The position numbers were made by a program, and so were the translations under genes. A model generated the notes under the pieces. That model made no database searches. It worked only from the letters and a program-made list of their open reading frames with translations, and was not told the origin of the DNA. Positions 19,256-63,412 of a DNA stretch of 64,000 bases are shown here, piece after piece. The stretch lies in the IMG/VR virus record IMGVR_UViG_3300027844_001828, positions 171,625 to 235,624 of that record; one strand, 5' to 3'. Position 1 is the first letter of the stretch. Each line of letters starts with the position of its first letter.

Positions 19256-19302
19256 AGTTGCACGTTGAAACAACGCCAAACACCAAACGGAGCACATCAA
19301 GC

Positions 19303-20427
19303 ATGAATGACGACATCAGAGCACTTTGGATGAAGAGAATCTTCTGCGAGATCAACAACTTGCAGTGGGCAATGAAGAAGCTTCAGGGACAGCATCCAAG
19401 GCTCATTGATCAATTGGAGCTTCCCAACATCATTATCAACGATGAGCTTAAACACGCTTGGGGCCGTTATCACAATAGTTCCAACACGATTGAACTCTCA
19501 GTGCGATTGCTCAACGATCATCCCTGGAGCGCGGTGAAACATGTCATTGGACATGAGTACGCGCATTTGGTCGTACATCGCGTTTTTGAGCTTCATGGGC
19601 GTCCACATGGCGAAGCTTTCAAGCGGGCTTGTAAAATTCTTGGAGTTGAAGACTCAACTACGTGCAGTCATGAGTTTCTTCAGAAGCAGGGTTACACAAA
19701 AGATGATTCTATGTTCCGAAAGGTTCAGAAGCTTCTTGCTTTGGCAGACGGCTCAAATGAGCACGAGTCCAGAAATGCAATGGTCAAGGCTCAGAGATTC
19801 ATTGAGCTTCACAATGTTGACTTGATCCGAGGCAATTCGGAGATCGAAGATCTTTATTTGAAAAGAACGGCGGGAAGATGCTGGAAAAGGATTCCGTCTT
19901 ACATTGATGCATTGGCGACAATCATCCGTGAGAACTACAAAGTCAAAGTCATCACGTCCGTCAATTATGGCGTCAATAAATATGGCGGAAGCGTGAGCGG
20001 GAAATGCCGCATGTTTGAATTCTTTGGAAAGCCAGAGCATTTGGACATTGCTGATTACGTTTTTAACTTTCTTCTTGACGCAGGCGAAAACGCTTGGAAG
20101 GAAGTTCAGAAGAGTGGTGAAGCGAAGGATTCTGGTTACAAAAAGATCGGTTACCTCAACGGGTTTTACGAAGGCTTCTCGGAGAAGCTTTGGGAAGCTC
20201 GTGAAGAGGTCGAAAAGGATTTTGACAACGACACAACCGCTATGATCTGCAAAGATGACGATATTCTTAACGAACAATACAGTCGCGCCTACACTCGTCT
20301 TGTGAACAGATACACTGGAAGTTCAAGAACCAGTAGTGGTTGGGGCGCTGGCGCATCTGCTGGCCGCATCTGCTCAATCAGACCTGGAGTCAGTGCCGGA
20401 GGCGGGGGGCCAAAACTTTTGACATGA
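19303..20427 (+). CDS. SprT-like zinc metalloprotease with DUF2786 domain
   Basis: HEYAH...PHGEAF; KVQKLLALA..SNEHE...AMVKAQ. Confidence 0.8.
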   Translation: MNDDIRALWMKRIFCEINNLQWAMKKLQGQHPRLIDQLELPNIIINDELKHAWGRYHNSSNTIELSVRLLNDHPWSAVKHVIGHEYAHLVVHRVFELHGRPHGEAFKRACKILGVEDSTTCSHEFLQKQGYTKDDSMFRKVQKLLALADGSNEHESRNAMVKAQRFIELHNVDLIRGNSEIEDLYLKRTAGRCWKRIPSYIDALATIIRENYKVKVITSVNYGVNKYGGSVSGKCRMFEFFGKPEHLDIADYVFNFLLDAGENAWKEVQKSGEAKDSGYKKIGYLNGFYEGFSEKLWEAREEVEKDFDNDTTAMICKDDDILNEQYSRAYTRLVNRYTGSSRTSSGWGAGASAGRICSIRPGVSAGGGGPKLLT

Positions 20428-28320: not shown

Positions 28321-29095
28321 AATAAGTGACAACGCAAGATCTAATGGATTTGGATGGGGGGAACCGCCGTCCTGAAGAGAGGTAACCATGAAAATAAAGA
28401 TCATTCAAGCTGGACAAGCATTAAGATGTAAGAAATCTCACATTTTCAAGTTGATGGAGGTGGGGTCGAATGATCAGATAAATGTCGAATTCAAGTGGTG
28501 TATCTATTATGAGGATGACACCTTGGTTAAGACCAGAGCCGATAAAGAGGAATATGTTCTCCCGAAACAAATGTCCATAACATCAAGAAACGCTACAAAA
28601 GAAAGCGCTGAACTTGTACTCGAAGAAGAATTCTCAAAGTACATAGCATCAATGGAACAACCAGACGGCGACGACGCACTCGTTTTGTTCTTGGAAGGTA
28701 AAGAGAAAAACATTGTCTATCAAGATGAAGATGTATGGGTGGCAATTAAGGAATTCTTCTTGTTTTTGTGCGAATGGGACGAGCCACCAGAAGTTAAAGA
28801 GCCAGAAACCTATACACAAGAAGAACTTGAAGAACATCAAAAGTCCGTACCCGAACTCTGGGACGCAGATCCCGATTGCTGGCATGAACTCGATCCAAAC
28901 TCATGGTCTGGAATCAAATGTATGAAATGCACAGGGTGGTATCGCCTCTAATGAATAGAAACACAGTAATATTTATTATCCTCTTGTCGTTATTTTTATT
29001 AACGGCAGCATGCGGATTTCCAGCTATGGCTTGACAAACACATAATTATCCGGTATAGTACAAGCATTAACAACGACAAGAACTAAGAGAATAAC

Positions 29096-29749
29096 ATGAA
29101 CTTGACAAGAAAACTATTGGCGTCAACAGAGCCGTGCCTCAAAAGAAACGCGATCTATGACAAAGACCCACAACAATTAGCCTACACAGTCAATGCGTCC
29201 ACAAACCCAATGGTCTTTATGGATGCGCAGAAAAGGATCATCGGCGAAGAGATCATTATCAAAGGTGATCTTGAATATATTGAAAAGAACGAAGATAAAA
29301 TGCTCACCGGAATCTTCGACCTTGCACAAGAACACGAAAAAGTCAAATATGATTTCAGAGACTTTAGATTGAGAACGATGATAAGGGCCATCCAGGACAT
29401 TGAAAAACATGATCTCGTCGTCGCAAATATCATCATGGGAATCGAAGACTGGACCCAATTGAATCACTACTACTCGGCTAAAAAATGGAAGAGGGTCTTC
29501 GGAGCATACGCAAAGGTAAGACCCATGACCGAAGAAACCTGGAAAACAACTGGAATCATAGCAAAGATCCAAGGACCAATAAGACCAGTTGATATCATCG
29601 CCCTTCCAAATATGCCAAAAGGACAAATCTACCTCGCTACCAAGGGAGAGTATATTGGAGAAATTAGTTCGTCGGAATTGAAGGATAATGTAAGATCTTT
29701 AACGATCTGTATAACAAGCATGACTGGAGTTAATGTATTAACAACATGA
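29096..29749 (+). CDS. Hypothetical protein, possibly a degenerate major-capsid-protein paralog
   Basis: Order of motifs RKLL, IYDKD, IEKHDLVVANIIM, TGIIAKI.G, MPKGQIY, EYIG recalls HK97-fold MCPs of large phages (from memory only). Confidence 0.35.
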   Translation: MNLTRKLLASTEPCLKRNAIYDKDPQQLAYTVNASTNPMVFMDAQKRIIGEEIIIKGDLEYIEKNEDKMLTGIFDLAQEHEKVKYDFRDFRLRTMIRAIQDIEKHDLVVANIIMGIEDWTQLNHYYSAKKWKRVFGAYAKVRPMTEETWKTTGIIAKIQGPIRPVDIIALPNMPKGQIYLATKGEYIGEISSSELKDNVRSLTICITSMTGVNVLTT

Positions 29750-30062
29750 AAATAAGCAACTTCAAATTAGAAAATGAAGAGAGAGACGGTGAGCATGTGA
29801 TTTTTACAGGGACAGTTGAAGTAGTCACCGGCTCCTGGTTCTGGAAAAAGAAGACGGTCAAAGGAGTCAAGAAGAAAACTTTTTTGTGGTTCTGGACCGA
29901 CAATGGTGAATTAACTCCGGGAGAACTCGTGGAAAACGCCGCCAGAGTCTTTGCAGAAAAATCAGGCAAGCATCCCAAACTCTTGTGAAAGAAACAATAG
30001 ATAAAACTGTTGACAATAAATCACAAGACTTAAGAATAAATTTGAACAGTAGGAGCAAACCA

Positions 30063-30458
30063 ATGAAACCAACTATCGGATGGAAAGTCATTAGTAAAGA
30101 GAGAAAATCAATCCTTACAGGTGATGTGAAAGGATACGGAAAAGAATATCCAATCGGGAAAATGGTGGGAAGATCCAAACGAAGACTCCCAATTATGGCA
30201 ATGAAAACAAGACAAGATGCCGTGGATTTCATAAAGATGGAAAGAAAAAAACACGACGAACAGGAGAACTACTTCACAAGAGCATTAGATGAAGCAGTGA
30301 TCGTTCAAGTGGAAATGTATGGAATCAAAGACAAAACAGAATACGTTAATGATACTAAAATCTTCTTGGTCTCTACTACGCCAATTGTAAGCCAATCATA
30401 CAAAAGACCATGGGCCAAAGGAACCGTCCTCTGCGAAGCAATCAAATGTATAACTTGA
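30063..30458 (+). CDS. Hypothetical protein, paralog of ORF 26413
   Basis: AGGAG SD; shared motifs with ORF 26413. Confidence 0.65.
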   Translation: MKPTIGWKVISKERKSILTGDVKGYGKEYPIGKMVGRSKRRLPIMAMKTRQDAVDFIKMERKKHDEQENYFTRALDEAVIVQVEMYGIKDKTEYVNDTKIFLVSTTPIVSQSYKRPWAKGTVLCEAIKCIT

Positions 30459-31961
30459 TAGGAGAATAAACAATGAAACCAGAAGGATTACTTCTTAAAG
30501 CCGAAAGAGAATACATAGAAAAGAACAAGTCGCCACTAAGAGAAGACTACCACTATGTCTAAAATAATGAGAGGAAATCTTTTAATAAAACACGGATTCT
30601 CAGTAGCTGTTGATGGTGTTGAAATCACAAGCAATCTATGATAACCTTACCAAAAAATAAAGCCATCGATGCCATTATAGCCGTCTACGTCAAACCAAAG
30701 GAAATAAAATGACATATAACACGCATACAGAGGGACTACCGCCAGGAAATGATAAGGACAACAAAGCTAAGAATAGAAGACCAAACGAAGGTAAGATTAA
30801 ATGCCCAGAACTAAACAAAGAACAACAAATAAGATATAATGCATACCTTGAAGGATGCTTGAAATATGTACATATCTGGGAACCAACAGAAGAACAATCT
30901 CAAAGAGAATTGAAATACGCAGAAGAACAATCTCAAAGAGCATTGGAATACGCAAAAGATAAATCACGAAAAAGCTTTCAATAACAACATGAATGAACAT
31001 AAAGAAGAATAAGCATGGGATAAGCAATGTAACCTCGAATTAACTGGGAGAATAAAGAATGACAGGAATAGAATGGTATTGCATATACTGTGGAGGATCA
31101 ATACTTACAAGCCTCGGAATCATTATGAACAACGGTGATAGATTCATAAGAAAAAAACACCCAAGATATGACGCCGATATATCAATCATAGCATGCCCAT
31201 TACTATTGCCAATGTCAATATACGCATTGATAGGTAAATTTTTATACTTAATTAATATAAAGACCACGTACATGACATATAACGAAAAACAGGAGAACCA
31301 ATATGGAACTCAACTTTAACCCGTTATTTGAACAATTGAAAAGAAAAAGAATTATTACTAATAACAAGCCGAAGCACAACCATAAGAAAATTAAAGAACA
31401 AAAACAAAAACAAGAGCAAAAGAAAAGGATGCTGCCAATTATGACAGCGATAACAGGATGAAACAAATTATTAATAAAATCATTGACTGACTCTGGTGGA
31501 TCATTGTAATAAGAAAAAATGAGTCCCACCCATCCCTTAACATGAACAAAGTAAATAAACATGGAATGCTCATAGAACAAAATAGAATCATGAGACTAAG
31601 AAAAAAAGAACATGACATGGATCTTGATAATGAATGACAATGAGGGAGAACAATATGGAAGATGAAGTATAGAAGAAACTCAATTGATTGAGAAAGAGAT
31701 AAAACTAATAAGCACAGACGCAGAACTCGGAGAAGCATGGTACGCTTCTCTCATAAATTCAAAGAAAACCTCGATCAAGAAAGACAAAATGAAACTAAGA
31801 TCCGAGACAGCGATGGAGCAAGACCAGTTGAAATACACGATGGAGGAAACCTCGGAAGCCAAAGATCAGAGATCATAGTATGGAATGCAGATCATGATTC
31901 AGTCGAATACGTTAGAGATAACATGAAGGAACTCTGGAAAGTAGTGTTGTTAGGAGAGTAA

Positions 31962-32715
31962 CACTGAATGTTGCGCACATAGGCGAAGTAGCACTGAATG
32001 CGTATACGATACACACGCACACACAGGTGATACTATCAAATGATCTATAGGAGGCCTTAAAATTGATATAATGACCTGTATATAACCCATTAAGTGACAT
32101 TATGGATCATATATGACGCATTATAGAGTCCTACTGAATGTTGTGCAGGCTCCTATGACATGCACTGAATGCCCACGCAAGGGCGCACGGAACATGCACT
32201 GAATGCCTGGATAGACATGCGCTCGAACATGCGCTCGAACATACGTGTGAGAGCGCATGTTACAAAAAAGCGTAACACTTGTTATAAAATAATGTAACTA
32301 TTATATGAATGGGTAAGGACTGGGGAAAAGTGTTATACAAAAGTATAAATAATAATTAATAGAATCACTTTTTCGAATTTCAGGAGCGCTGCTCAAAAAA
32401 ATTTCTCCTTTAATGATGTTGTGTAAAGATCGCAAAATCAAACACTTACAAAAATGACTAAAATATAATAACTGTAAGGATTAAAATAGGCCGTTTAAGG
32501 GGTTGCACTGGTCGCAATAGAGGTGTATATTGTGTACCATGATGGGCAACTATCGTCGTAGTAGAGGTTAATGTTAGTAAGAAGATGACGAGTTTTTTGA
32601 CATGCACTGAATGTTCGTATGTGCGCATGTGTGTTAGTAAGTATGCACGCCTGTTAATAATGTGACCTGTCGTTTAAAAATGATGACCTGTGATTTCTAA
32701 GAGGTTAGCCAACTT
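31962..32715. other. Long non-coding locus; candidate replication origin or genome terminus
   Basis: CACTGAATG at 31962, 31992, 32163, 32197, 32605 plus TACTGAATG at 32132; AT-rich core; strand composition flips here. Confidence 0.5.
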
Positions 32716-32784
32716 GTGAACTTTAAGTTTCGCTTACGAAACTCAAAGTTCATTTATCAATATATAGGTGTGATACATTTAAAT

Positions 32785-33399
32785 ATGATTGATCCTCAGA
32801 AGAAAAAATTATATGCCTGGGAAGAATATCTACATGATCATTTGGAAATTGTAGAAGAGAGCCTATCAATCGTAGAGTGCCGAAAAATCATTCGAGAGAT
32901 GTGCGAAGACTTTGCTATCATTCCCCCAAAAGTGATAATCGGGAAAAAAGAATATGCCATGGCATCTGGGGATGGGAAATTAATCGAGTTGCCAAAATGG
33001 TTTCTGGAAGAACTATCTAGTATTCATGAGGCATGTCATGTGATCGCCTTTAGCATAGCTCCACAAGAAAATCATCATGGCCCGACATTCGTGAGATTGA
33101 TGATAGATTTTATTAAAAAGAGATGGGCATCTGAGATAACATTAAAAAGACTTGAGGATTTAGCTCTTAAACATAATCTAAAAATTGCGAAGCTTGGGGT
33201 GGTCTCTCCGGTCACGAAACGAGAGAAACAGAGGCTAAGGCGGCTAAGAACAAATGTGAAGATAGCAGACGATATGTACAGGGTGAATCAAAGGGGATCA
33301 AAGCGGGCCATTAATTATAAAAAGAAACGGGACTCTTATAAAAAAGAATTATCTGATCTCGTCGGACTTCTTTATAAAAAGTACTGGTCAGTCTTATAA
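32785..33399 (+). CDS. Zincin-motif (SprT-like) protein
   Basis: IHEACHV...HHGPTF. Confidence 0.6.
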   Translation: MIDPQKKKLYAWEEYLHDHLEIVEESLSIVECRKIIREMCEDFAIIPPKVIIGKKEYAMASGDGKLIELPKWFLEELSSIHEACHVIAFSIAPQENHHGPTFVRLMIDFIKKRWASEITLKRLEDLALKHNLKIAKLGVVSPVTKREKQRLRRLRTNVKIADDMYRVNQRGSKRAINYKKKRDSYKKELSDLVGLLYKKYWSVL

Positions 33400-33481
33400 A
33401 AGTATTGGTAATTTCTGTAAACCCTTTTGGTCATTTTCATAAAAGTCTTTACGTATATGACCAAAAGTCTGGAGAGTTGTC

Positions 33482-33515
33482 GGTTCACTGTATAAAACAT
33501 TTTATACAGTGGACC
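33482..33515 (+). repeat. 34-bp 13-8-13 palindrome, copy 1
   Basis: GGTTCACTGTATA-AAACATTT-TATACAGTGGACC; degenerate copies at 33429-33462 and 33548-33581. Confidence 0.95.
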
Positions 33516-33816
33516 GAAACGAGGAAGCGCCTGGTGTACGAAAACGGACGATTTGGTAAAAACACTTTTATACAGTGGACCGGAGGGTTGGCCGTGGAGT
33601 TTTGGTAAGATCTGTAAAATATCCCTTAATAGGTATAAGAGAAAAGAATCTTTCACAGAGTGCTTGTAATGTGAATGTTGGTGGGATATAGTGTTTGCAT
33701 GATAACCAAAACGACAATCAATGGCGACATTGTTCAGATTGAAACAGCAACATAGCAAGGGTGAAGCAGTAGAGTGGCTTGAAAAAGAGAGTGTACTAAC
33801 TTACGGATGGTGAATT

Positions 33817-34059
33817 ATGGATATCAAATATGCCAAATCTGGAAATGTTACATTGACATCTGAGGCTTTCTCTTACCATCCTTTATGGTGGCATGAGAAA
33901 GGGTTACAGGAAACTGCATCTGGGTATGGATCTAAGCTGACTACACCGTACAAGGTGCGGCACAACAATAGATGGAAGAGAGTCTATGCGATTTGCTGGA
34001 GCAATGCGGCAAGCCATTACATCTTCAACAAGGGACAACGTGAATATATTCATGGGTGA
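33817..34059 (+). CDS. Conserved phage hypothetical protein
   Basis: ETASGYGSKLTTPYKV...RVYAICWSNA motif. Confidence 0.65.
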   Translation: MDIKYAKSGNVTLTSEAFSYHPLWWHEKGLQETASGYGSKLTTPYKVRHNNRWKRVYAICWSNAASHYIFNKGQREYIHG

Positions 34060-35001
34060 AATATGAAAATCTCTGAAATACCGAATCTGGACGATCATTC
34101 AATTGATCCAAATGATTACGATAAATTGATCGTAGAGTTTCTTGTAGCAGGACAGTGCCTTCTTAGGCTCTCTAACTACGCTCAAATAAAGGCTGAAAGC
34201 ATAAAGGAAAGAAAAGCAGGGAACATTGAAAAAGCTTTTCTTCTATCTCGTAATATGGAAAATACTTATAATGAATTGCCAGATTGGGCGAGGTGGTGAG
34301 ATGAAAGCAGTAACAGGAGAATTGTGGCAAAATAAATCACCTCTGTCAAGAGTGAATGACAATCTGGTAGAACGATGAATGGGATAGGGGTTCAGCCCCC
34401 CAAGAAAAGATCACACGACACATCACAACGGAGGGTTGAGAGATGACTATCGAACACCCAGAATATTTTTACTATGCAGAGCTGGAAGGCGACTTCTTTC
34501 ATTCGTTTGATTATTATACGGATTTGGTTATCAACATCCACTGCACCTCAATTGAAATCCGTAAAACCTCGATGAAAAGGTACACTTGGCCTTGGCGGAT
34601 GCTCAGGGAGACGCATTGGGAGGCGGTGGAAGACGCCGAGAACCTCCTAAAGAATTATGCCGACGTCCTGTTCCGAAGCCAGCAGAAACCCCACCCTGCC
34701 ATCCCAGACGCAGATGCGGTGAACACCCACATCTTGAAAATGAGGGACGGGGTGTCGTTGCCGTCGCCGGAATACATGCGAGAGTGGATTGGTACTCAAA
34801 CCCTCTACCTGTATGCTGGACCTGGCCAAGTGCATGTGGAACCACTACCCCACGAACAAGGAGACGAGGAATGAGTGAATGACAAGACGATGTGCAGGTT
34901 GCGACTCTGAATCTATATAAGGGATTCTCCGAAGGTGGTCGTCATCGAATGGTTAGTTGATCATGCGACTGAGGTTCAATCCCTGTATCAGACTGCCAAT
35001 C

Positions 35002-35043
35002 TTTCTAATAACGACTTGAAAAGTCAACTTGAGGGGTTAGAGT
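35002..35043 (+). promoter_or_regulatory. Promoter-containing 42-bp direct repeat, copy 1
   Basis: TTTCTAATAACGACTTGAAAAGTCAACTTGAGGGGTTAGAGT; TTGAAA-N16-TAGAGT. Confidence 0.85.
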
Positions 35044-35108
35044 GTTATTATGTCAATAACATACAAAGAACTTGCAGCAACGATTTTGTCCTGGAATCAG
35101 GAATAACG

Positions 35109-36689
35109 ATGAAGATTAAAGTTGGTCACGAGTTCTTCCGCAAAGAGCGGTACTCCGCATACGCTGATTGGAAAACCGCATTCTGGCGGGAACTGGAACA
35201 AAATTCAGATGATGCCAAGTCAAGGCGCGTCGATATCAATATAGTTCCTGATGGGAATGGCTGTATTGTTGGATTCGATGACAACGGCTGTGGTATGAGT
35301 GAGGCTGTCATTCGGGATGTGTTTATGAGTCTTGGTGAGACTACGAAGTCGGGTGATTCTACGGGTGGGTTTGGTCGCGCTCGTATGCTGACTCACTTTT
35401 CAATGCCTAAGTATCAGATCAAATCGGGTTGTATTTATGTGAGCGGCAAGGGATCTGAGTATCAAATCAGGAAAAGTGATAGCTACGTTTTGGGGACGAA
35501 GCAGAAGATATGGATTGATGATGCTTCTATGTCAGACATGGAAATGGCTTTGCATGATTATCTTGGAAAGTGTAATCTTGCCCATGACATCTACGTCAAT
35601 GGTGTACGGTGGAACAAGTGGTTGTACAGGCGTAAGCTTATCAGGGATATGACATTTGGTTCAGTCTACGTGAACAAATCCTCAGACCTTAAAAACACAG
35701 TCGTGTTCAGGGTCAACGGGGTGATGATGTTCACTCGATATACATCGGCAAATGCGTTGGTGGTGATCGAAATCTATCCCAGTATTAGTCGTGATGTGCT
35801 TACTTCTAACCGTGATGGAATTCACTACAAGTATCAAAGCGAACTGGATATATTTCTTAACAAGTTGGCTATCGATACGACTTCGACTCTAAAGCGTAGA
35901 CGGACAAACAAGAGTACTCGCAGACAAGGACAAGGTTGTTTCATCTCCTGTGTAAAGCGGAAGGAATTGTCGGTGATGAAGCGGGATTCTGATCCATCCG
36001 ATTCCTACTCTGGTAACGGTGGCTACACTATGGATACTTCAAGTGATGAAGCCACGATAAAGTCCTTCACAGGTGTGGTTTTTGGTGGCACAAGTCAGGC
36101 AGATTCTGAGCCGATTGCAGCCTTGTACGGTGGTGATGGCTATTATGGATCTGAGTCTGAGTGTATCGCCAAACTCGTAGAATCTGATCCTACTGAGATC
36201 GATATGTATGATGTGGCGATACTTGATGAGTGTCAGGATATAGGACCGGTTAGTAAGGTGATCGAATCATACGATCCTACGAATTGGAGAGACAAGGCTG
36301 GCGGCACGAAAAAGAAGCTCCTGTCTCTGTGGCAGATTGCGGTCAAGCATTCTCTGGATATTCTTCAAGAGGAAAAACCCTCTGATGGTATTCCTTGGAT
36401 CGTTGGGTGGGTATTCGATGATAGTGAAGAGGCAGGGATGAAGGCTGCACACAAGATGTATGACGATACGCATGGGTTCCTTATCAATCCAGTAGGCTTG
36501 GATGGCAAGTTGCAATTCAAGTTGAATCCTGAGGGCAAGTCTTCATTGTTCGCAATCGCCCTACATGAGGTTACTCATGTTTATTGCGAGATGCACAATC
36601 AGGAGTTCTCGTCCCTTCATACTGCACTGACAATCAATGGGATGTCTCGGATCAAGGAAGTTCTCAGAGACATGAAGGAGAATTCATAA
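35109..36689 (+). CDS. GHKL (Hsp90/MORC-like) ATPase with C-terminal HExxH motif
   Basis: RELEQNSDDA, DDNGCGM, GGFGRA, GT; ALHEVTH...HNQEF. Start placed downstream of the promoter. Confidence 0.8.
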   Translation: MKIKVGHEFFRKERYSAYADWKTAFWRELEQNSDDAKSRRVDINIVPDGNGCIVGFDDNGCGMSEAVIRDVFMSLGETTKSGDSTGGFGRARMLTHFSMPKYQIKSGCIYVSGKGSEYQIRKSDSYVLGTKQKIWIDDASMSDMEMALHDYLGKCNLAHDIYVNGVRWNKWLYRRKLIRDMTFGSVYVNKSSDLKNTVVFRVNGVMMFTRYTSANALVVIEIYPSISRDVLTSNRDGIHYKYQSELDIFLNKLAIDTTSTLKRRRTNKSTRRQGQGCFISCVKRKELSVMKRDSDPSDSYSGNGGYTMDTSSDEATIKSFTGVVFGGTSQADSEPIAALYGGDGYYGSESECIAKLVESDPTEIDMYDVAILDECQDIGPVSKVIESYDPTNWRDKAGGTKKKLLSLWQIAVKHSLDILQEEKPSDGIPWIVGWVFDDSEEAGMKAAHKMYDDTHGFLINPVGLDGKLQFKLNPEGKSSLFAIALHEVTHVYCEMHNQEFSSLHTALTINGMSRIKEVLRDMKENS

Positions 36690-37048
36690 TGAGTTGGTAC
36701 ATAGTCGGTGAAGATGGAAAGTGTCAGGCAAAGGAGAATGATTTGCAGATCGCTTTGATGGTGGCTAAGGGAAAGGGATGTCCTTTCATTACGGATGACA
36801 TTAAGTCACCAAAGAAGCAGTGGATCAAGGTGGATGATGTGATTAGTTGCGGGGCATACATCGAAGATGCGGGAGGCGAAGTGAAAAGCGGCGGATTGGA
36901 GGTAGGTACGATGAGTAATTCAACGTTTGATCGATTAGTTCTTATTGGAGCTAAGAGAAAATGGAAAAGTGTTCCTTTGGTGATTACTTTGAGGATCATC
37001 CATAAATGCAGTGGGGGTCATCCACCTTGTGACGAGCAATGAGACTTA

Positions 37049-42450: not shown

Positions 42451-42484
42451 GGTTCACTGTATAAAAACTTTTATACAGTGGACC
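42451..42484 (+). repeat. 34-bp palindrome, copy 2
   Basis: GGTTCACTGTATA-AAAACTTT-TATACAGTGGACC. Confidence 0.95.
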
Positions 42485-43683
42485 GTAGTGATAGGCACCC
42501 GGAAGTCTTTTTCCTAAAAACTCCTCAAGTGAGCTTGTAACCAACGAATGATGGGTTATTGTGTGAGTATGTCAAAAACAATCCAGATCAAAAAGGGCTG
42601 CGAGTGTGGTAGCCAGAGGTTCAATGCAGATCGATTGATCCGCGTTGAAATCATTGTTGACGAGAACAATATGTTCGTTGAAAATATAGCTGGCGGCGAT
42701 GCTGTCTCTATTGTTGACGACAAACCCCCAGAGGGACCGTACACTTGTGTTGAGTGTGAGTGCGAGTACGACACCCTTGATGGAGAATGATGCCTACCAA
42801 ACGTAAGTTTTACCGTACTGTTCTTGCTATCGAAGTTCTTAGCGAGACGCCCATTTCGGCCTGTACTTCATATCAGGACATTCTTCGTGAAGCTGAAGAG
42901 GGTGATTTCTCTCATGCTTCACTTCCTCAAGAGGTATACAATCAGGAAATAGACGGGCGAAAATGCGCTGAGCTTTTGGTTAGGCAGGGTAGCGATTCTG
43001 GTTTTTTCCAGTTGACAGATATTGGGGAGGATGTCGAGGATTATGATGGATAAATTGTATGTTCCTTATGTGACGGAAAGGTGGGTAGTGATACCGCACA
43101 CCTCAATCAAGATAAATGGATCGGAGAGTGTTGCTGGGATGAAAGACTCCGGGGGACAGAATAATGGCTGAGTTAATAGTAATTTCTGTGGTTATTTTCA
43201 TTTCTTGTGTGGTGTGTACGTTCGTTGCCACACAAAAGCAGGCGAAACCTTTGATGATCTTGCAAGGGGTTATCAGAAAGAGATCGAAGAGCTTTACAAG
43301 CAGATCGCCAACATGATCGAATTTGTCCCATTCACAGCCTGGAGAATTGTGTATGAGAATAAGATGTTCATTGTAAAAAGCGAACAGATTAATATACGCA
43401 GGATTGTAAATGGAGAAATCCGATATATGGTTAGCACTGGCATGTTCTGCACTGGGATGTTTTCGACTCTTTATGACAGTCGAGACGACATTCCTAAAGG
43501 TAGGGGGAATTCCCGCACATGGTATCACCATGCTCTTTTCAAAGATGAAATTGAAGCGTTGCTTGCCATTCAAGGGTTGGCGCAAGAAATTTTGAAGACT
43601 CGCAACGATTCACATCAAGAAGACGTTTTACCGCTTCACAAATCAATCGACTCAAACGCCAAACGCTTAAAGGAACTCGGAAT

Positions 43684-43860
43684 ATGAAATACATTCGCAG
43701 AAATCCGCTGGAAAAAGACTTTGGTTGGGGAAAATTAAAATTAAGAAGTTGGGATAAAATTAAAAATGAGCTTGACAAATGCGATCTTCTTTGTGGAAAT
43801 TGCCATGATGAAGCGCATCAAGAAATTAGAACTGGAACTATTTTTACCCCAATAGCTTAA
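43684..43860 (+). pseudogene. HNH endonuclease C-terminal remnant running into tRNA-Arg
   Basis: NPLEKDF...WDKIKNELDKCDLLCGNCHDEAH. Confidence 0.7.
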
Positions 43861-43920
43861 GGGATAAAGCAGTGGATTTCTAATCCACATATTCAGGTTC
43901 GAATCCTGGTTGGGGTACCA
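43846..43920 (+). tRNA. tRNA-Arg(UCU)
   Basis: Acceptor ACCCCAA/TTGGGGT, anticodon arm GTGGA-TTTCTAA-TCCAC, T-loop GGTTCGAATCC, encoded CCA. Confidence 0.92.
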
Positions 43921-44314: not shown

Positions 44315-44941
44315 ATGAGTAAAGCAACCATCATGGCTGGCATCGACAGCGACAGCAGCCGCGTCATCGCCAACAATACAGTCGAGTACACTGTTGGCAA
44401 AGCCCGTACAATACGGCTGCATTCGACGGACGTCATCACCTTCGATGCGCTCGGCGGCGTGACGCTGGACACGGGGGGCTGGCTAACCCCGACCACCAAA
44501 GACCGGATAAACCAATTCCAAACCGCTGCTCGGTTGCACAGCGAGCGGGGGATCTGGTACGCTACCATCGGAGGCAAGCGGTACATATATCAAGACGGCC
44601 TCCGCATCGGGCCACGCGGCGGCGTCACGGGCCACGCTGGTCCGGCAGCGATCAAGGCGCAGCGTAAAAAAACTAAGCAAATCAAAGCTTACTGCGATGC
44701 TATTCGGGCGCTGGATACGTTGCCAGAACCAGAACCCGGTGACTGTTTTATTTGTAGTGGTTTTAAAGGCACCGATTGTCTGCAAAGTCACCTGGATGAG
44801 ATGTATATACACGGGTCACTCATTAGGCGCGCAATGGAGGCGCGTGGATACAGCGAGTTTGCGCTGCGATTTGCCTATCAGATCGACAATCGTGACACAG
44901 TTGTCCGTGCAGTCCTAGCCTATTTCAAGGCCAACTGCTAA
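44315..44941 (+). CDS. Conserved phage hypothetical protein in a GC-richer island
   Basis: RLHSTD...TLDTGGWLTPTTKDRIN motif. Confidence 0.65.
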   Translation: MSKATIMAGIDSDSSRVIANNTVEYTVGKARTIRLHSTDVITFDALGGVTLDTGGWLTPTTKDRINQFQTAARLHSERGIWYATIGGKRYIYQDGLRIGPRGGVTGHAGPAAIKAQRKKTKQIKAYCDAIRALDTLPEPEPGDCFICSGFKGTDCLQSHLDEMYIHGSLIRRAMEARGYSEFALRFAYQIDNRDTVVRAVLAYFKANC

Positions 44942-46452: not shown

Positions 46453-46586
46453 GGGACCGTAGCACAATGGTATGTCATAATTGTCATGGAGAGATACATG
46501 ATGAGCTAATTCCTAAAAAACAAATTTTAGAACTTCAAATTAGTAAATGGAATCGTGGCCAAACGGTTAAGGCTGCATGCTCATAA
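46453..46586 (+). pseudogene. tRNA 5' fragment fused to HNH C-terminal remnant
   Basis: GGGACCGTAGCACAATGGT joined to (M)VCHNCHGEIH. Confidence 0.6.
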
Positions 46587-46624
46587 CATGTTGATTGTAG
46601 GTTCGAACCCTACCGGTTCCACCA
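46549..46624 (+). tRNA. tRNA with CAU anticodon (elongator Met or Ile2)
   Basis: Acceptor GGAATCG/CGGTTCC, anticodon arm GCATG-CTCATAA-CATGT, GGTTCGAACCC, encoded CCA. Confidence 0.9.
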
Positions 46625-47580: not shown

Positions 47581-47799
47581 ATGAGGACAATCGTCCATGT
47601 GAATCAGCATGTGATAAAAGCTAATAGAAAGAATCAAAAGAACGATCCAGTTTTGACAGTCAAGACCTATAAAAGTAATGACTACGCACATGAGGTCATA
47701 ATAAATGGACCCTCGAAGATAATCTATAGACCGGACAAGCCATTGCCTTGCGGAGCGCAAGTTTGGATTGAAACAGAATCAGATGTAGAAAAAAGGTAG
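47581..47799 (+). CDS. Conserved small phage protein
   Basis: HVNQHVIKAN...PDKPLPCGAQVWIET; AAGGAG SD. Confidence 0.75.
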   Translation: MRTIVHVNQHVIKANRKNQKNDPVLTVKTYKSNDYAHEVIINGPSKIIYRPDKPLPCGAQVWIETESDVEKR

Positions 47800-47880
47800 G
47801 AAGCTTTTTTGTGGAAAATATATTGCCCAGAATGTATAATAAAAGAGGGCGAAGTCAATAACAAACACAGAGGATGACAA

Positions 47881-48036
47881 ATGAGTATCGCTGAACGACT
47901 TGAATATTTACGTGGGGAAATTAAACAAGAACGAATCAGCTACGGAGAAATTGCTGAATTGCAATCACTTGCGACACACATTGACGAGGGTGACGTTCAA
48001 CTCCGAGAATGGGCAGGGATTCCAGAGAGGGAGTAG
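47881..48036 (+). CDS. Small phage protein (51 aa, not in ORF track)
   Basis: GAGGA SD; RLEYLRGEI..ERISYGEIAELQSL...EWAGIPE. Confidence 0.65.
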   Translation: MSIAERLEYLRGEIKQERISYGEIAELQSLATHIDEGDVQLREWAGIPERE

Positions 48037-48130
48037 AGTGGTACAAGATTGTAGACACAGTGATTCCAGCCAATGCAAGGAAAAGAGAGATGGATGAAAA
48101 ATTAAAGCGGATTGACCATTCGAGGCGATT

Positions 48131-48580
48131 TTGAGATGTAACGCAGGAATTAGTCCAGAGCACATGGCAGATCAGCATTTGTGTGAAGCAAGTGAACTTA
48201 AAATGGTGCCTGGCACCATAAAAAAGAGATTAAAATTTAACATAACAAAACCCATCCCAGATAAGTTTTGTTTGAATGGAGGACATATCTCGTTCTTCTA
48301 TGATAAATTGCACTATTTGCGCCTTCGCCATGGTCATGTATTTAAGGAATGCATAGCCAGAGGTAGAAAATGCCAGAGCTTATTTTATGATCTATCAGAT
48401 TTTCCTGACAATCTGATAAATGATTGGCATCCTACTTTAGATGATAGTAGGATAGTAAGAACCCGCATGGTGAAGAGATTATTTCAGAAACCCAAATTTT
48501 ATCGCTATAAAGGAGAACCTATAGATGATATGGAAGACTTTTGCTCTAGGATCATGCTGAGTCCTTTATATACGAAGTAA
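48131..48580 (+). CDS. denV: Pyrimidine-dimer DNA glycosylase (T4 endonuclease V-like)
   Basis: ADQHL..E, IPDKFCL.GGH..FFYDKL.YL, EC..RG, KPKFYRY; may lack one residue near the catalytic Glu. Confidence 0.78.
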   Translation: MRCNAGISPEHMADQHLCEASELKMVPGTIKKRLKFNITKPIPDKFCLNGGHISFFYDKLHYLRLRHGHVFKECIARGRKCQSLFYDLSDFPDNLINDWHPTLDDSRIVRTRMVKRLFQKPKFYRYKGEPIDDMEDFCSRIMLSPLYTK

Positions 48581-50087: not shown

Positions 50088-50229
50088 GGCTTAGCAAGGC
50101 AGTACTGGTGTAGCCGGTTAGGGTTTTGAGCCCGGTGGCAGTCGCACCCTTAAGATACAAAAGTATTGATAAGGCACCAGTTGGGAATAAGCTGCACAGT
50201 CGAAGCGGACGTAGAGATTGCCAAGTCTC
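50088..50229 (+). ncRNA. Candidate structured RNA upstream of HNH gene
   Basis: GGCTTA/TAAGCT and ACTGGTGT/GCACCAGT stems enclosing two hairpins. Confidence 0.35.
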
Positions 50230-50255
50230 GCCCCACCGTTTCATTTTGGATAACT

Positions 50256-50672
50256 ATGAAAGAAACCATCATAAAGAAAAAGCAAGACCTCGAAAGAACG
50301 GGTGGTCACATCAAACCTGAAGATGTATTCCCATTCATTGAGCCAAGCACGAAACCGAACAGGAGTCCAAAGCATGATTTCCTGGGACACTCAGTAAATG
50401 TTTCGTCTCCCCGCTACAATGTCTTCGCAAACAAGGGATGTGACTGTGTTACTTGCGGAGTTAAGGGTAAGTATTTCCTCCTTGAAAGGCACAAGGCCTC
50501 CGGCCCCAAGCAGCCCTATCATTTGAATCTCTACGCTATCGATTTCGAAGGGGATGAGGTACTTATGACTGTTGACCACATCATCCCAGCTTCGCATGGT
50601 GGACCCAGATCCTTCGACAACCTTCAGCCCATGTGCAAAGTTTGTAATGAAGAAAAGGGTAACACAGTTTGA
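50256..50672 (+). CDS. HNH endonuclease
   Basis: CVTCG...MTVDHIIPASHGG...NLQPMCKVCNEEKGN. Confidence 0.88.
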   Translation: MKETIIKKKQDLERTGGHIKPEDVFPFIEPSTKPNRSPKHDFLGHSVNVSSPRYNVFANKGCDCVTCGVKGKYFLLERHKASGPKQPYHLNLYAIDFEGDEVLMTVDHIIPASHGGPRSFDNLQPMCKVCNEEKGNTV

Positions 50673-52643: not shown

Positions 52644-52677
52644 GGTTCACTTTATAAAATGTTTTATACAGTGGACC
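52644..52677 (+). repeat. 34-bp palindrome, copy 3 (inverted spacer)
   Basis: GGTTCACTTTATA-AAATGTTT-TATACAGTGGACC. Confidence 0.95.
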
Positions 52678-52746: not shown

Positions 52747-52780
52747 GGCTCACTGTATAAAACATTTTATACAGTGGACC
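52747..52780 (+). repeat. 34-bp palindrome, copy 4
   Basis: GGCTCACTGTATA-AAACATTT-TATACAGTGGACC. Confidence 0.95.
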
Positions 52781-52855: not shown

Positions 52856-52883
52856 TTGACATAAACGTTTGGTGAGTTAGAGT
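52856..52883 (+). promoter_or_regulatory. Sigma70-like promoter, 16-bp spacer
   Basis: TTGACA-N16-TAGAGT. Confidence 0.75.
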
Positions 52884-54362: not shown

Positions 54363-55427
54363 ATGAGCGCAGGAATCATACCCGGAGTCGATGCAGGATG
54401 TATTGGCTACAAGGAACATTTCGGGGGTACCTGGCATGGGTTCCCGGAGTACGAAGTTATCGATGGCCCAGTCTCAATGGAACAGACCCGTAAAATTCTT
54501 GAGCATGAAGTTGTCATGAATCCGGTAACGTTGACTGGTGACTTCGAAGGCGAGGAAACCGAGATGTTCGCTCTTGTTCGCAAGGACACTGGCCGCGTCC
54601 TTTACAAAGAGAGCGTGTCGGATGAGTATTACATCACCCAGAACAAGGCGTTTCTCGACCAGCTTCAGTTGCGTATCTTGACCCCAAACCCGCAAGTTTC
54701 AATCGAATCCACCGGTACGCTCTTCGCCTTCCGCGTCGGTTTCGTGAACTTGCTTCTCAATCGGTTCCGTGTCAATGGTGATGACAGTGAGACAATCGCT
54801 CGTCTCATGTACTACAATGCGTTCGGTGGTCGCAGCATTACAGCTGGCGCACACACCACTCGTATCGAATGTGCCAACACGATGAACATGGCCGAAGCGC
54901 AAGCTTACGCTAACGCAACGATCAAGAAGTTCAAGCATACAAAGAATGCTGAGAAACGTCTTGCTGACCACCTCGTTGACTTGGGCGAGATGTATTCGCT
55001 CATGGAAACGCACAAGGACGCACTCAACTGGCTTTCTTCGCAGACTATCAACTCAACGGAAGTTCAGCGGTTCGTTGGTAACCTCTTCGCCCTCCCAGCC
55101 AAGGCTTCGAAGACGATGATCAGTCGGCGAACCAGAGAGCGGGGCGAACTCTTGCAACACTTCGAGGACTGTGACAATCTTCAGGGTGCGATTGCGAGGA
55201 CTCGATTTTCCATGCTTCAGGCTGTTATCTGGTACGCGAACAACAACAATATCCGTGGGGATAGTGACATGGCGTATTCGTACTTCAATACGGTTTCCGG
55301 CGGGACACGTGATGCCTTGAATCAGCAGGCGTTCAGGCTCTTGACTTGTCAAGACATCCCGCTCCCAGTCGTTGACATCACTGAACCGGAAACGGCGGGT
55401 GAGACGGAACTTGCTCCCGCAGAGTAA
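54363..55427 (+). CDS. DUF932 (TIGR03299-like) protein
   Basis: WHG, VSDEY..TQN, ESTGTL, RIECANT, KHT. Confidence 0.75.
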   Translation: MSAGIIPGVDAGCIGYKEHFGGTWHGFPEYEVIDGPVSMEQTRKILEHEVVMNPVTLTGDFEGEETEMFALVRKDTGRVLYKESVSDEYYITQNKAFLDQLQLRILTPNPQVSIESTGTLFAFRVGFVNLLLNRFRVNGDDSETIARLMYYNAFGGRSITAGAHTTRIECANTMNMAEAQAYANATIKKFKHTKNAEKRLADHLVDLGEMYSLMETHKDALNWLSSQTINSTEVQRFVGNLFALPAKASKTMISRRTRERGELLQHFEDCDNLQGAIARTRFSMLQAVIWYANNNNIRGDSDMAYSYFNTVSGGTRDALNQQAFRLLTCQDIPLPVVDITEPETAGETELAPAE

Positions 55428-56178: not shown

Positions 56179-56206
56179 GACAGCCGAACGTCGAATATTA
56201 GTAAAG

Positions 56207-56238
56207 AAAAGCCCCACCGGGAAACTGGTGGGGCTTTT
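56207..56238 (+). terminator. Intrinsic terminator preceding palindrome
   Basis: AAAAGCCCCACCGG-GAAA-CTGGTGGGGCTTTT. Confidence 0.85.
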
Positions 56239-56297
56239 CTGTTTTCCCGGCTCGCCGATCTTTACCCCCTTGGCGAGACCTCCTGGTGACCTCGGCT

Positions 56298-56331
56298 GGC
56301 TCACTGTATAAAACATTTTATACAGTGGACC
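56298..56331 (+). repeat. 34-bp palindrome, copy 5
   Basis: GGCTCACTGTATA-AAACATTT-TATACAGTGGACC. Confidence 0.95.
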
Positions 56332-56424
56332 AAAACGGGTGGTCTCGATCAGACCAGGGCTGACCTCTCATATTTCTTTTCAAGAACAGCTTGCAATGTT
56401 GAAGATGCGATCTATATTGTTGAT

Positions 56425-62472: not shown

Positions 62473-62506
62473 GGCTCACTGTATAAAACATTTTATACAG
62501 TGGACC
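62473..62506 (+). repeat. 34-bp palindrome, copy 6
   Basis: GGCTCACTGTATA-AAACATTT-TATACAGTGGACC. Confidence 0.95.
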
Positions 62507-63412
62507 GGGATTTGTTGACGGCGGACACGGCGGACAAAAATATTCCTAAAAAGTGTTTGTACTCAAGGAATGTTGATGTAGATTATTAGCAACCTAAACC
62601 AAAGGATTGATCATGAAGCACTATTTTTTAGTTGGAGTGAGAGAAGTTCACGTATCACATCGGATGGTGTGTGTTGAAGATGAGGACGGGAATCCTTCTG
62701 GTCAATCCCTTGAGGAATGCGCGATTAGCAAGGCGCTCGAAGAGTCTGAAAACGAAGTTTTCTTGGAGTACTCGTACACGATGGAGGAAACAAGGACTCC
62801 AGAGCGAGCTTCTGAGGATGATATTGCAAACTTCTACCCACAAGACGACTCGGAAGAAGAACAGGGGGGGGGATGAACCAGCCCACCAGAGTCGTAGAAT
62901 GTGAAGAACCGGTAGTTCGCAAGTTCGTTGCTGGCGAACTCACTGAGGAAGAAGCATTTGCGGAACACCGAAGGCTCCAATTTAAGCACTTGCGAACAGC
63001 TTATGAGAAGGTGTTCGGGAAGGACTCCAGAGCATTGATCGTCACTGCTATCGAAGATCAGATGACAGCTTTGGGAAAAGTGTCTACCTCAGAAAAGGAG
63101 TGGGCCAGGATTCGTATCGCCGAGTACAAAGAAATATTGATAAACTTGGGCGAGATCGATTGACTTTTTATTTATAGGTGTCATATTGTTTTATTATGGC
63201 AAAAAGTACACATAAGGAGAACACCTATGTTTGAAAACAAAGAGTTTGATGCCGAGCCATTCGACGCCTTTGTGTCCCGTATGAGTGAGGTGGAGAAGAG
63301 CGCGGAGTTTGTACCGACGGTTACGCCCGAGGCAAAGACAGGGAACATCGGCTACTTCGAGATAGAATGCTTTGATGGAGTCTGGTGGGGCTAATTATTT
63401 TCACAAATGAGC

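What the first reader, a model, noticed from the sequence alone, without database searches (positions are those of the whole stretch)
33330..33600. Graded cluster of degenerate palindrome copies next to the putative origin
Seen: 33429-33462 (GGTCATTTTCATA-AAAGTCTT-TACGTATATGACC) keeps the 34-bp length and GGT/ACC ends. 33482 is intact, 33548-33581 keeps only the right arm, and further (C/T)TTATAAAA half-like motifs lie at about 33335-33400. Inference: a cooperative loading array (strong plus weak sites) less than 1 kb from the 32-kb non-coding locus, linking the palindrome system to replication, partition or packaging.
Basis: partly seen in the sequence, partly recalled or inferred. Interest (0 to 1): 0.6.

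Follow-up and report, generated by a model that had tools for sequence, protein, structure and literature searches.

The report
Phage operator-like palindrome control region
The flagged stretch is the control region in front of the first operon of one arm of an uncultured marine jumbo phage: it holds one full and one half copy of an almost invariant 34-base palindrome that precedes nearly every host-type promoter in that arm, plus a separate set of local repeats, and nothing links it to a replication origin.

Summary
The window is the last 64 kb of a 235.6-kb marine jumbo-phage record. The palindrome GG-NN-CACTGTATAAAA-NN-TTTTATACAGTG-NN-CC is real: six full copies, all in window 33-63 kb. At least 14 more lie in a relative's contig that runs past the record's end.

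Across 51 distinct contexts the core never varies. The free positions do not co-vary, which fits a protein site rather than a hairpin. In most contexts a sigma-70-type promoter with an UP-like element lies 62-165 bp away, on one side only.

At 33330-33600:
- The intact site (33482-33515) is confirmed.
- The right-arm-only copy (33566-33581) is confirmed and is the only orphan half-site in the data.
- The "degenerate copies" are mostly a separate local repeat, TGGTMA-N6-YNTAAA. It has 5 copies here and 1 elsewhere in the genome. Three are direct at 21-22 bp and two form the 33424-33467 imperfect palindrome.
- Each degenerate copy scores at background; only their clustering is significant.

No DnaA boxes, skew inflection, initiator, ParB or recombinase were found.

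Best reading: a dispersed operator acting on promoters from a distance, with extra private sites at this first promoter. The binding protein is unknown.

Side finding: a ~4-kb element encoding a minimal family-A-polymerase-like protein carries arrays of 4-6 intact palindromes.

The parts
32716..33399 (+). ORF upstream of the cluster (227 aa, weak SprT-like metalloprotease motif). Its last ~65 nt carry the YTTATAAAA half-like motifs, which encode YKK.
   Evidence: only its own cluster and one weak partial match (E 1e-4) in the protein database
33305..33379 (+). Three to four half-like motifs GGnnnnnnTTATAAAA (starts 33305, 33329, 33364), 9-11 of 14 half-site positions; inside the ORF's 3' end.
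33385..33443 (+). Three direct copies of the local repeat TGGTMA-N6-YNTAAA (33385, 33406, 33428) at 21-22-bp spacing.
33424..33467 (.). Imperfect palindrome (20-nt arms, 85% complementary) made by local repeat copy 3 and an inverted copy 4 (33448-33463, - strand).
33482..33515 (.). Intact 34-bp palindrome (28/28 conserved positions); leftmost copy in the record.
33548..33581 (.). Half copy. The right arm 33566-33581 is perfect; the left arm is replaced by sequence beginning TTTGGTAA, like the local repeat. It cannot form a hairpin (z -0.27).
33603..33618 (+). Fifth copy of the local repeat, about 46 bp upstream of the -35 hexamer.
33664..33692 (+). Sigma-70-type promoter TTGTAA-17-TATAGT heading the operon that starts at 33721/33817.
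   Evidence: In the one RNA run, contigs lie on 33936-36901 and none on 32124-33935 (weak, contigs only).
33817..34059 (+). First sizeable gene of the operon (80 aa, phrog_3436, function unknown).
42451..42484 (.). Palindrome copy 2; promoter at 42535-42562.
52644..52677 (.). Palindrome copy 3 (one core mismatch, G to T).
52747..52780 (.). Palindrome copy 4, 103 bp from copy 3; promoter at 52856-52883.
56298..56331 (.). Palindrome copy 5, after the terminator at about 56205-56245; promoter at 56391-56418.
62473..62506 (.). Palindrome copy 6; promoter at 62557-62584. With its flank it gives a 59-bp match (96.6%) to the 4-kb element.
31961..32716 (.). It holds five exact copies plus one one-mismatch variant of CACTGAATG, a 12-nt tandem repeat whose copy number varies between strains, and an AT-rich stretch.

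Best explanation
The region 33305-33692 is the intergenic control region of the first transcription unit of the palindrome-bearing arm of a marine jumbo phage.

The 34-bp palindrome is most likely the binding site (operator) of a two-fold symmetric, sequence-specific DNA-binding protein. That protein is not identified and is probably phage-encoded. In this lineage one site, sometimes two, stands 62-165 bp upstream of the -35 hexamer of nearly every host-type (sigma-70, UP-element) promoter of the arm. In the clearest cases it sits between the preceding terminator and that promoter. The bound protein would act on the promoters from a distance, either as co-ordinated repression or shut-off of these units or as insulation between them.

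At this first promoter the standard module (one intact site) is supplemented by a half-site and by five copies of a private 16-nt repeat, which are probably sites for a second factor.

Shown: the sites, their invariance, the lack of pairing covariation, their position relative to promoters, and the separate identity of the local repeats.

Inferred: that a protein binds, that it regulates transcription, and the direction of the effect.
For: - Six copies in the window against 0.00 expected, none elsewhere in the record.
- 40 metagenome loci hold the palindrome, with up to about one copy per kb. None was found in one genome each of 185,579 prokaryote species.
- In 51 distinct contexts the 2 x 12-bp core and the outer GG/CC are essentially invariant. 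Positions 3:32 and 4:31 pair no more than chance (23 vs 19.6 and 11 vs 19.9 expected).
- The orphan half-site keeps a perfect arm although it cannot fold.
- About 20 of 29 distinct contexts have a promoter-like match within 200 bp, in 17 of them on one side only; most belong to the ATTTCTTTTCAA..TTGCAA-N16-TAGATT family, at 62-125 bp and up to 165 bp.
- In the own genome this promoter family is found almost only in the arm, and 4 of its 7 PWM hits (plus the N17 promoter at 33664) follow a palindrome.
- Strong intrinsic terminators precede the sites at 52560 and 56205.
- In the one RNA run, contigs cover the operon downstream of the 33664 promoter but not the cluster.
- The local repeats are a distinct family confined to this locus.
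Against: - No candidate binder. ParB_N, HTH_3 and HTH_17 gave no match in the record. None of the 90 ORFs from relatives' arms hit a recombinase, HTH or ParB family; a weak C2H2 zinc-finger match is the only nucleic-acid-binding-type hit. Only three small or unknown proteins are shared between the divergent arms.
- The distance to the promoter is variable and long for a classical bacterial repressor or activator.
- The near-total invariance of 24 core bases is stronger than in most operator sets. It would also fit a site copied by recombination or recognised by a nuclease or recombinase.
- Terminators do not regularly precede the sites in a relative.
- No expression or binding data exist. RNA evidence is contigs only.
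Confidence: 0.45

Rival explanations
1. Mobile regulatory cassette or recombination signal. The palindrome marks the boundary of promoter cassettes that are shuffled between genomes, like PeSLs, or is the crossover site of a site-specific recombinase (12-bp half-sites around a 2-bp core). The cluster at 33.3-33.6 kb would hold scars of such events, namely the half-site and the replaced arm.
For: - The arm is hyperplastic. Only three proteins are shared with divergent relatives, although the palindromes and promoters are conserved.
- A 100-bp block (95% identity) shared with a relative starts exactly at the outer edge of the palindrome and ends at the -35.
- The 12-2-12 layout has a centre that is never self-complementary (0 of 51).
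- The invariance fits copying.
- The half-site looks like a rearrangement.
- A 59-bp match including flank exists with the 4-kb element.
Against: - No resolvase or integrase in the record and none in 90 ORFs of relatives' arms.
- The one clear insertion/deletion between lineages has its breakpoints at gene ends, 247-362 bp from any palindrome.
- Homodinucleotide centres, which a recombinase would tolerate, are also absent.
Confidence: 0.2
2. The cluster is an origin-type or loading array (iterons plus strong site) that serves replication, partition or packaging together with the neighbouring non-coding gap.
For: - Three direct 16-nt repeats in 21-22-bp phase plus an inverted pair resemble iterons plus an operator.
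- The repeat-rich, AT-rich 755-bp gap lies 600 bp away.
- The locus is the left boundary of the palindrome arm.
- A separate 4-kb element has arrays of intact palindromes next to a polymerase-like gene and GC-rich repeats.
Against: - No DnaA boxes: 2 in the window against 8.3 expected, none near.
- GC skew is positive throughout, without inflection.
- No initiator, ParB or terminase-like gene beside it.
- The palindromes themselves are spread over at least 58 kb in front of promoters, which does not suit a single cis site.
- No read-end pile-up was seen, though only contigs were available.
Confidence: 0.1
3. The function lies in an extruded hairpin or cruciform, or in an RNA hairpin. Examples are a hairpin promoter or priming site for a polymerase (N4-like logic), or an RNA processing site.
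For: - The palindrome folds very stably (RNA -26.1 kcal/mol, z -8.1; DNA -15.7 kcal/mol, z -7.0) and has an A4-NN-T4 centre that favours extrusion.
- The 4-kb element that carries arrays of it encodes a family-A-polymerase-like protein.
Against: - The variable positions 3:32 and 4:31 do not pair above chance. The sequence, not only the pairing, is invariant.
- The perfect orphan arm cannot fold.
- The sites lie between terminator and promoter, so they are largely untranscribed.
- The polymerase-like protein has no homolog in the phage.
Confidence: 0.1
4. The degenerate part (everything except the intact site and the half-site) has no function of its own. It would be AT-rich coding tail plus decayed local duplications.
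For: - Each copy scores at background.
- Three motifs are in coding sequence, giving YKK.
- No diverged relative of this locus exists to show conservation. The three near-identical strains are identical here, but the surrounding genes (32328-34676) are also unchanged, so this says nothing either way.
Against: - The clustering is the genome-wide maximum (P = 0.0005 against local shuffles).
- Five copies of a 16-nt pattern occur here against one in the other 235 kb, in helical phase.
Confidence: 0.15

Closest known systems
KorB operators (OB) of plasmid RK2 (ParB-family CTPase clamp plus KorA)
   Same: An invariant palindromic site in many dispersed copies, standing upstream of promoters at short or long, variable distances. 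OB lies 4-10 bp or 45 to >1,000 bp upstream (PMC11790492). It acts on sigma-70 promoters from a distance, and clusters of sites occur.
   Different: The site here is 34 bp, not 16 bp. No ParB_N or KorB-like protein is in the record or in the relatives' arms. No partition genes were seen. The host element is a lytic-type jumbo phage arm, not a plasmid backbone.
PeSL promoter-terminator cassettes of T4-like phages (PMC2839356, PMC4122927)
   Same: Repeated composite regulatory cassettes with a sigma-70-type early promoter, lying between small variable ORFs in hyperplastic regions. The cassette is conserved while the genes around it are not.
   Different: In PeSLs the stem-loop is a short G+C terminator hairpin next to the promoter. 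Here the palindrome is a 34-bp AT-centred, sequence-invariant element without a T-tract, 62-165 bp from the promoter, and separate terminators exist. The phage replicates with a DnaE-type polymerase, not a T4-type one.
Dispersed C1 operators of phage P1 (own knowledge, not checked here)
   Same: One repressor's operator is scattered over a large phage genome in front of many operons, with some sites doubled.
   Different: P1 operators are 17-bp asymmetric sites that overlap the promoters. Here the sites are symmetric and lie far upstream.
Iteron arrays of plasmid and phage origins (R6K, RK2 oriV, lambda ori; own knowledge)
   Same: The local TGGTMA repeats are direct, about 21-22 bp apart, with an inverted pair beside them.
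   Different: Only three direct copies. No adjacent initiator gene, no DnaA boxes, no skew signal.
Crossover sites of serine invertases and resolvases (hix, gix; own knowledge)
   Same: 12-bp inverted half-sites with an A-tract next to a 2-bp non-palindromic centre.
   Different: No serine recombinase gene. There are extra conserved outer GG/CC bases. Homodinucleotide centres are absent.

Membership tests
ParB/KorB-operator system | Invariant palindromic site in several dispersed copies | tested here: met
ParB/KorB-operator system | ParB_N (CTPase) DNA-binding protein encoded by the element | tested here: not met
   PF02195 gave no match in the 235.6-kb record, while the control genomes gave matches. 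None among 90 ORFs of relatives' arms. About 7% of the genome is missing.
ParB/KorB-operator system | Sites upstream of regulated promoters, proximal or distal | tested here: met
   62-165 bp upstream of the -35; compared with PMC11790492
PeSL (T4-type promoter-early stem-loop) | Sigma-70-type early promoter in a repeated cassette within a hyperplastic region | tested here: met
PeSL (T4-type promoter-early stem-loop) | The stem-loop is a short G+C-rich terminator-type hairpin directly coupled to the promoter | tested here: not met
   The palindrome has AT-rich 16-bp arms, no T-tract and a variable 62-165-bp distance. Separate GC-rich terminators are present.
PeSL (T4-type promoter-early stem-loop) | Host genome is a T4-type myovirus | tested here: not met
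   The replicative polymerase is DnaE-like, about 33% identical to the nearest phage records.
Iteron-type replication origin | Three or more direct repeats of 17-22 bp in helical phase | tested here: met
   33385, 33406 and 33428 at 21-22 bp
Iteron-type replication origin | Adjacent initiator gene, DnaA boxes or AT-rich unwinding element | tested here: not met
   No DnaA box within the locus. Neighbouring genes are SprT-like, phrog_3436 or unknown. The AT-rich stretch is about 900 bp away.
Iteron-type replication origin | Strand-composition inflection at the origin | tested here: not met
   GC skew is positive in every 10-kb bin; the cumulative minimum and maximum lie at the record ends. This is confounded by co-oriented genes.
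LexA SOS box (gammaproteobacterial type) | CTGT-N8-ACAG | tested here: not met
   The spacing here is CTGT-N14-ACAG. No copy was found in one genome each of 185,579 prokaryote species.
Serine-recombinase crossover site | Inverted 12-bp half-sites around a non-palindromic 2-bp core | tested here: met
   The centre is never self-complementary, 0 of 51.
Serine-recombinase crossover site | Cognate serine recombinase encoded nearby | tested here: not met
   PF00239 gave no match in the record; none in relatives' arms.
N4-type hairpin promoter | Short hairpin (5-7-bp stem, 3-nt loop) whose structure is what is recognised | tested here: not met
   16-bp arms and a 2-nt centre. The variable stem positions pair at chance level.

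The most novel reading that the evidence does not exclude
The 34-bp palindrome is a cis-signal shared between an uncultured marine jumbo phage and an independent ~4-kb mini-replicon that encodes its own minimal family-A DNA polymerase. The mini-replicon would be a satellite or hyperparasite. Its arrays of 4-6 intact sites would either hijack or titrate the phage's palindrome-binding factor, or its own two-HTH protein would target the phage's early promoters. The mixed array at 33.3-33.6 kb would then be the phage's master control point of that circuit.
Probability: 0.15. Interest if true: 0.8.

Novelty: new variant of a known kind. Interest (0 to 1): 0.5.

Why it matters
If the palindrome is a dispersed operator, it defines the early or accessory regulon of a whole lineage of uncultured marine jumbo phages. 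That regulon has at least 20 promoters and includes anti-defence-like genes. It also gives a direct handle, a 34-bp bait, for finding the regulator.

It would add a phage example to the very few bacterial cases of promoter control from sites tens to hundreds of bp upstream.

The same site occurs in arrays on a separate polymerase-encoding mini-replicon. This hints at cross-talk between a jumbo phage and a small element, which would be new.

For the scan itself, the result is a caution. The "graded weak copies" are a different repeat family, and the origin link is not supported.

Tried and rejected
- Near-identity search of 32-36 kb against 50,697 phage records: no match.
- Relatives of the flanking proteins in IMG/VR: only a near-identical strain. 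The SprT-like ORF has no informative homolog, so conservation of its tail could not be judged.
- Near-identical strains show no difference between 32328 and 34676, so they say nothing about constraint.
- Strict PWM built from relatives: it separates true from degenerate sites, but it is biased because the training loci were found by exact core match.
- Binder hunt: ParB_N, HTH_3, HTH_17, Resolvase and Phage_integrase all negative in the record. Metagenome records could not be searched through handles.
- Pfam and PHROGs on about 45 window ORFs and 90 relatives' ORFs gave no DNA-binding family apart from a weak C2H2 zinc-finger match.
- The only mid-size protein shared by divergent arms (44315-44941) belongs to the widespread Kyano_Gp96 family, so it was not pursued as the binder.
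- Breakpoint-at-palindrome statistics: too few internal breakpoints (10) to test.
- Terminator scan of a relative: 17 found against 13.6 expected, so a terminator before each palindrome is not general.
- LexA box, DnaA boxes, Rfam families and tRNAs in 27-35 kb: nothing.
- Reads: all runs are held as contigs only, so no transcript starts, molecule ends or depth profile could be read.
- Profile and phmmer searches of the mini-replicon's two proteins against the six-frame phage: nothing, even at E 10.
Full report
**What the window is.** The window is bases 171,625-235,624 of a 235,624-bp IMG/VR virus record, estimated 93% complete. It equals a marine metagenome contig. The record encodes a DnaE-type polymerase, DnaB-like and other helicases, a fused SbcCD-like nuclease, a Lon-like protease, ribonucleotide reductase and an NAD-dependent ligase. 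It also has several giant ORFs without family matches. Of 274 greedily chosen ORFs, 233 are on the + strand. The polymerase is only about 33% identical to anything in 50,697 phage records. This is therefore an uncultured marine jumbo phage. At least 12 seawater or marine runs hold half or more of the 6-kb test stretch.

**The palindrome family.**
- The core CACTGTATAAAA-NN-TTTTATACAGTG occurs six times in the window, against 0.00 in shuffles. It occurs nowhere else in the record. A seventh, right-arm-only copy is at 33566-33581.
- A scan of metagenome contigs found 40 loci, some with about one copy per kb. A scan of one genome for each of 185,579 prokaryote species found none.
- Contigs that overlap the last 1.4 kb of the window at 99.7-100% identity continue past the record's end. 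One carries 14 further copies in about 28 kb. The record is therefore truncated inside the palindrome-bearing arm, which spans at least 58 kb.
- Over 51 distinct contexts the consensus is GG-NN-CACTGTATAAAA-NN-TTTTATACAGTG-NN-CC.
- The free positions 3:32 and 4:31 are complementary no more often than their base frequencies predict: 23 vs 19.6 and 11 vs 19.9. So nothing selects for stem pairing, while sequence identity is nearly absolute.
- The centre dinucleotide is never self-complementary and never a homodinucleotide. It always has one A/T and one G/C base (0 of 51 exceptions; 0 of 29 per context cluster).
- These features point to recognition of duplex DNA by a symmetric protein rather than to a hairpin, although the element would fold very stably as a single strand.

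**Where the palindromes sit.**
- All window copies are intergenic. Each is followed on the + strand by a promoter of one family: an UP-like ATTTCTTTTCAA stretch, then TTGCAA or TTGTAA, a 16-17-nt spacer, and TAGATT or TATAGT.
- About 20 of 29 distinct contexts have a promoter-like match within 200 bp, in 17 of them on one side only. Most are of this family and lie 62-125 bp from the palindrome centre, up to 165 bp at the locus studied here.
- A PWM of the promoter family hits the own genome at 41505, 42535, 52856, 56391, 62557 and 63413 of the window, and only once elsewhere. The N17 promoter at 33664 is not covered by that N16 model.
- Strong intrinsic terminators precede the sites at about 52560 and 56205. 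A terminator before each site is not general in a relative.
- The arm is organised as promoter-headed units. In the window these are operons of 3-10 kb. In relatives they are cassettes of about 1 kb.
- The arm's gene content is hyperplastic. Only three proteins are shared with divergent relatives, although palindromes and promoters are conserved.

**The flagged cluster.**
- 33482-33515 is a full site (28/28).
- 33548-33581 has a perfect right arm. Its left arm begins TTTGGTAA and matches little of the consensus (20/28 overall). It cannot fold (z -0.27). It is the only orphan half-site beside 137 paired site occurrences in all loci.
- 33429-33462 matches 16/28 conserved positions, a level reached at about 92 other places in the genome. 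In a strict PWM all degenerate halves score below 6 bits, against 28-29 bits for nearly all true halves.
- The cluster as a whole is still significant. Eight half-like matches (9-12 of 14) lie on the + strand in 320 bp. This is the maximum of the whole genome (mean 0.98) and is exceeded in 0.05% of local dinucleotide shuffles. Three of the window's five YTTATAAAA copies lie in 33335-33401.
- The explanation is a second, locus-specific repeat, TGGT[AC]A-N4-6-YNTAAA. It has five copies (33385+, 33406+, 33428+, 33448-, 33603+). There is one other copy in 235 kb and none in the relatives' other palindrome loci.
- Three of these copies are direct at 21-22 bp.
- These repeats share only the frame GG...TATAAAA with the palindrome half and lack its invariant CACTG.
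- The upstream YTTATAAAA motifs lie in the last 65 nt of ORF 32716-33399 (weak SprT-like motif), where they encode YKK. That ORF has no informative homologs, so the tail's conservation cannot be judged.
- Three near-identical strains show no difference between 32328 and 34676. Their differences fall in 30.5-32.3 kb, including the copy number of a 12-nt tandem unit at 32215.

**The origin idea.** The 755-bp ORF-free gap (31961-32716) is real. It holds five exact copies of CACTGAATG plus one one-mismatch variant. The window has 11 exact copies against 0.83 expected, 10 of them on the + strand. It also holds an AT-rich stretch. Nothing marks it or the cluster as an origin:
- no DnaA boxes;
- GC skew positive in every bin, with no inflection;
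- no initiator, ParB, terminase-like or recombinase gene nearby or in the record;
- no Rfam family.

In public runs the assemblies break at the palindrome, with many different continuations and about ten-fold summed depth. This only shows that it is a repeat in the community. An RNA run has contigs on 31827-32123 and on 33936-36901 but none on 32124-33935. That is weakly consistent with transcription of the operon behind the 33664 promoter. These are contigs only, and DNA carry-over is not excluded.

**Mechanism.** The best-supported model is a dispersed operator. A dimeric protein binds each palindrome and acts on the downstream sigma-70-type promoter from 60-165 bp away, either by repression or shut-off of the arm's units or by insulation between units.

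The nearest functional parallel is KorB on RK2. Its invariant palindromic OB sites lie 4-10 bp or 45 to >1,000 bp upstream of promoters and work through a sliding clamp (PMC11790492). Membership fails, because no ParB_N protein is present.

PeSL cassettes of T4-type phages are the nearest architectural parallel: repeated early-promoter cassettes in hyperplastic regions (PMC4122927). Their stem-loops are short GC-rich terminator hairpins, unlike this element.

The 12-2-12 layout with an asymmetric centre also recalls serine-recombinase sites, but no recombinase was found. The one clear indel between lineages has breakpoints at gene ends, not at palindromes.

At the flagged locus, the standard module is supplemented by a half-site and by private phased repeats. 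I read these as sites of a second factor specific to this first promoter. A decayed or rearranged origin of these extras cannot be excluded.

**A side finding that bears on the question.** Six short contigs (54% GC, against 41-47% in the phage's 10-kb bins) form a family of units of about 3.7-4.4 kb. Each unit has:
- a 431-aa protein;
- a 181-aa protein with an excisionase-type HTH_17 and a second HTH resembling a small-terminase N-terminus;
- a repeat-rich non-coding region of about 1.3 kb with 4-6 intact palindromes at 50-128 bp spacing.

The 431-aa protein has no Pfam or PHROG match and only close relatives, all on contigs of 3.2 kb or less. Its model (pLDDT 71) matches the polymerase domain of family-A DNA polymerases (Foldseek E 1.6e-5, probability 1.00, low TM-scores of 0.30-0.39). 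It has invariant residues in motif-A-like D262...E267 and motif-C-like H392-D393 positions. The motif assignment is my reading of the alignment. Language-model neighbours point the same way.

Neither protein has a homolog in the phage or in the relatives' arms. No DNA match longer than 59 bp links the element to the phage. It lacks the phage's promoter family. Its depth relative to the phage differs between two runs (25.7 vs 4.6, and 7.1 vs 8.3). All six samples that hold it also hold phage contigs with the palindrome. It therefore looks like a separate small replicon of the same system, either a satellite or a plasmid of the host. It shows that arrays of intact sites do exist, but on another element.

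**Verdict.** The interpretation (graded copies of one site forming an origin-linked loading array) is only partly supported. What is there is the first promoter-control region of a regulon-like arm defined by a new, highly constrained 34-bp palindrome, with the binding protein unknown.

Noticed in passing
L051:1-5156 (also L029, L038, L048, L049, L054): Family of units of about 3.7-4.4 kb at 54% GC. Each has a 431-aa protein whose model matches the family-A DNA polymerase domain, a 181-aa two-HTH protein, GC-rich repeats, and arrays of 4-6 intact copies of the phage's palindrome. No protein is shared with the phage. It occurs in the same six samples as the phage, at a varying depth ratio.
   Followed up: partly
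window 31962-32613, 38502, 41512, 51614, 51645, 55432: A second motif, CACTGAATG, usually followed by CGCAC/ACACAC-rich sequence. There are 11 copies against 0.83 expected, 10 of them on the + strand. Five exact copies plus a one-mismatch variant lie in the 755-bp gap. One lies in the spacer of the promoter-like site at 41505, and it recurs in relatives' intergenic regions.
   Followed up: partly
all palindrome copies (window and L020-L059), positions 17-18: The centre dinucleotide always consists of one A/T and one G/C base. In 51 contexts it is never self-complementary and never a homodinucleotide. Unexplained.
   Followed up: partly
window 62619-64000 and L053, L052, L056: Other samples' contigs overlap the window's end at 99.7-100% identity and continue for up to about 28 kb with 14 more palindromes. 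The 235.6-kb record ends inside this arm.
   Followed up: partly
window 33664, 42535, 52856, 56391, 62557, 63413; relatives L022-L047: A conserved promoter family with an UP-like ATTTCTTTTCAA element, TTGCAA/TTGTAA, an N16-17 spacer and TAGATT/TATAGT. In this genome it is confined almost entirely to the palindrome arm.
   Followed up: partly
window 30560, 31397-31402, 32215-32226: Strain differences among four near-identical genomes cluster in 30.5-32.3 kb. They include 6-nt indels and loss of one 12-nt tandem unit (ACATGCGCTCGA). The stretch 32.3-34.7 kb is identical.
   Followed up: no
window 29000-32000: Strongly A-rich + strand (AT skew 0.29-0.39) with only short ORFs, directly left of the non-coding gap.
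   Followed up: no
window 9228-10670, 19258-20427, 32716-33399, 54363-55427: A PARP-like protein with WGR and regulatory domains, SprT-like/DUF2786/DUF7168 proteins and a DUF932 protein. These families are typical of plasmid leading regions and anti-restriction modules, here in a jumbo phage.
   Followed up: no
window 43846-43920, 46549-46624, 48131-48580, 50166-50672, 59490-60578: tRNA-Arg(TCT) and tRNA-Met, a pyrimidine-dimer glycosylase-like gene, an HNH endonuclease and an alanine dehydrogenase, all within the palindrome arm.
   Followed up: no
window 47581-48097 vs L042:2852-5861: Two small genes that are adjacent in the window are separated in a relative by about 2.6 kb carrying two extra palindrome-headed cassettes. 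The breakpoints lie at gene ends.
   Followed up: partly
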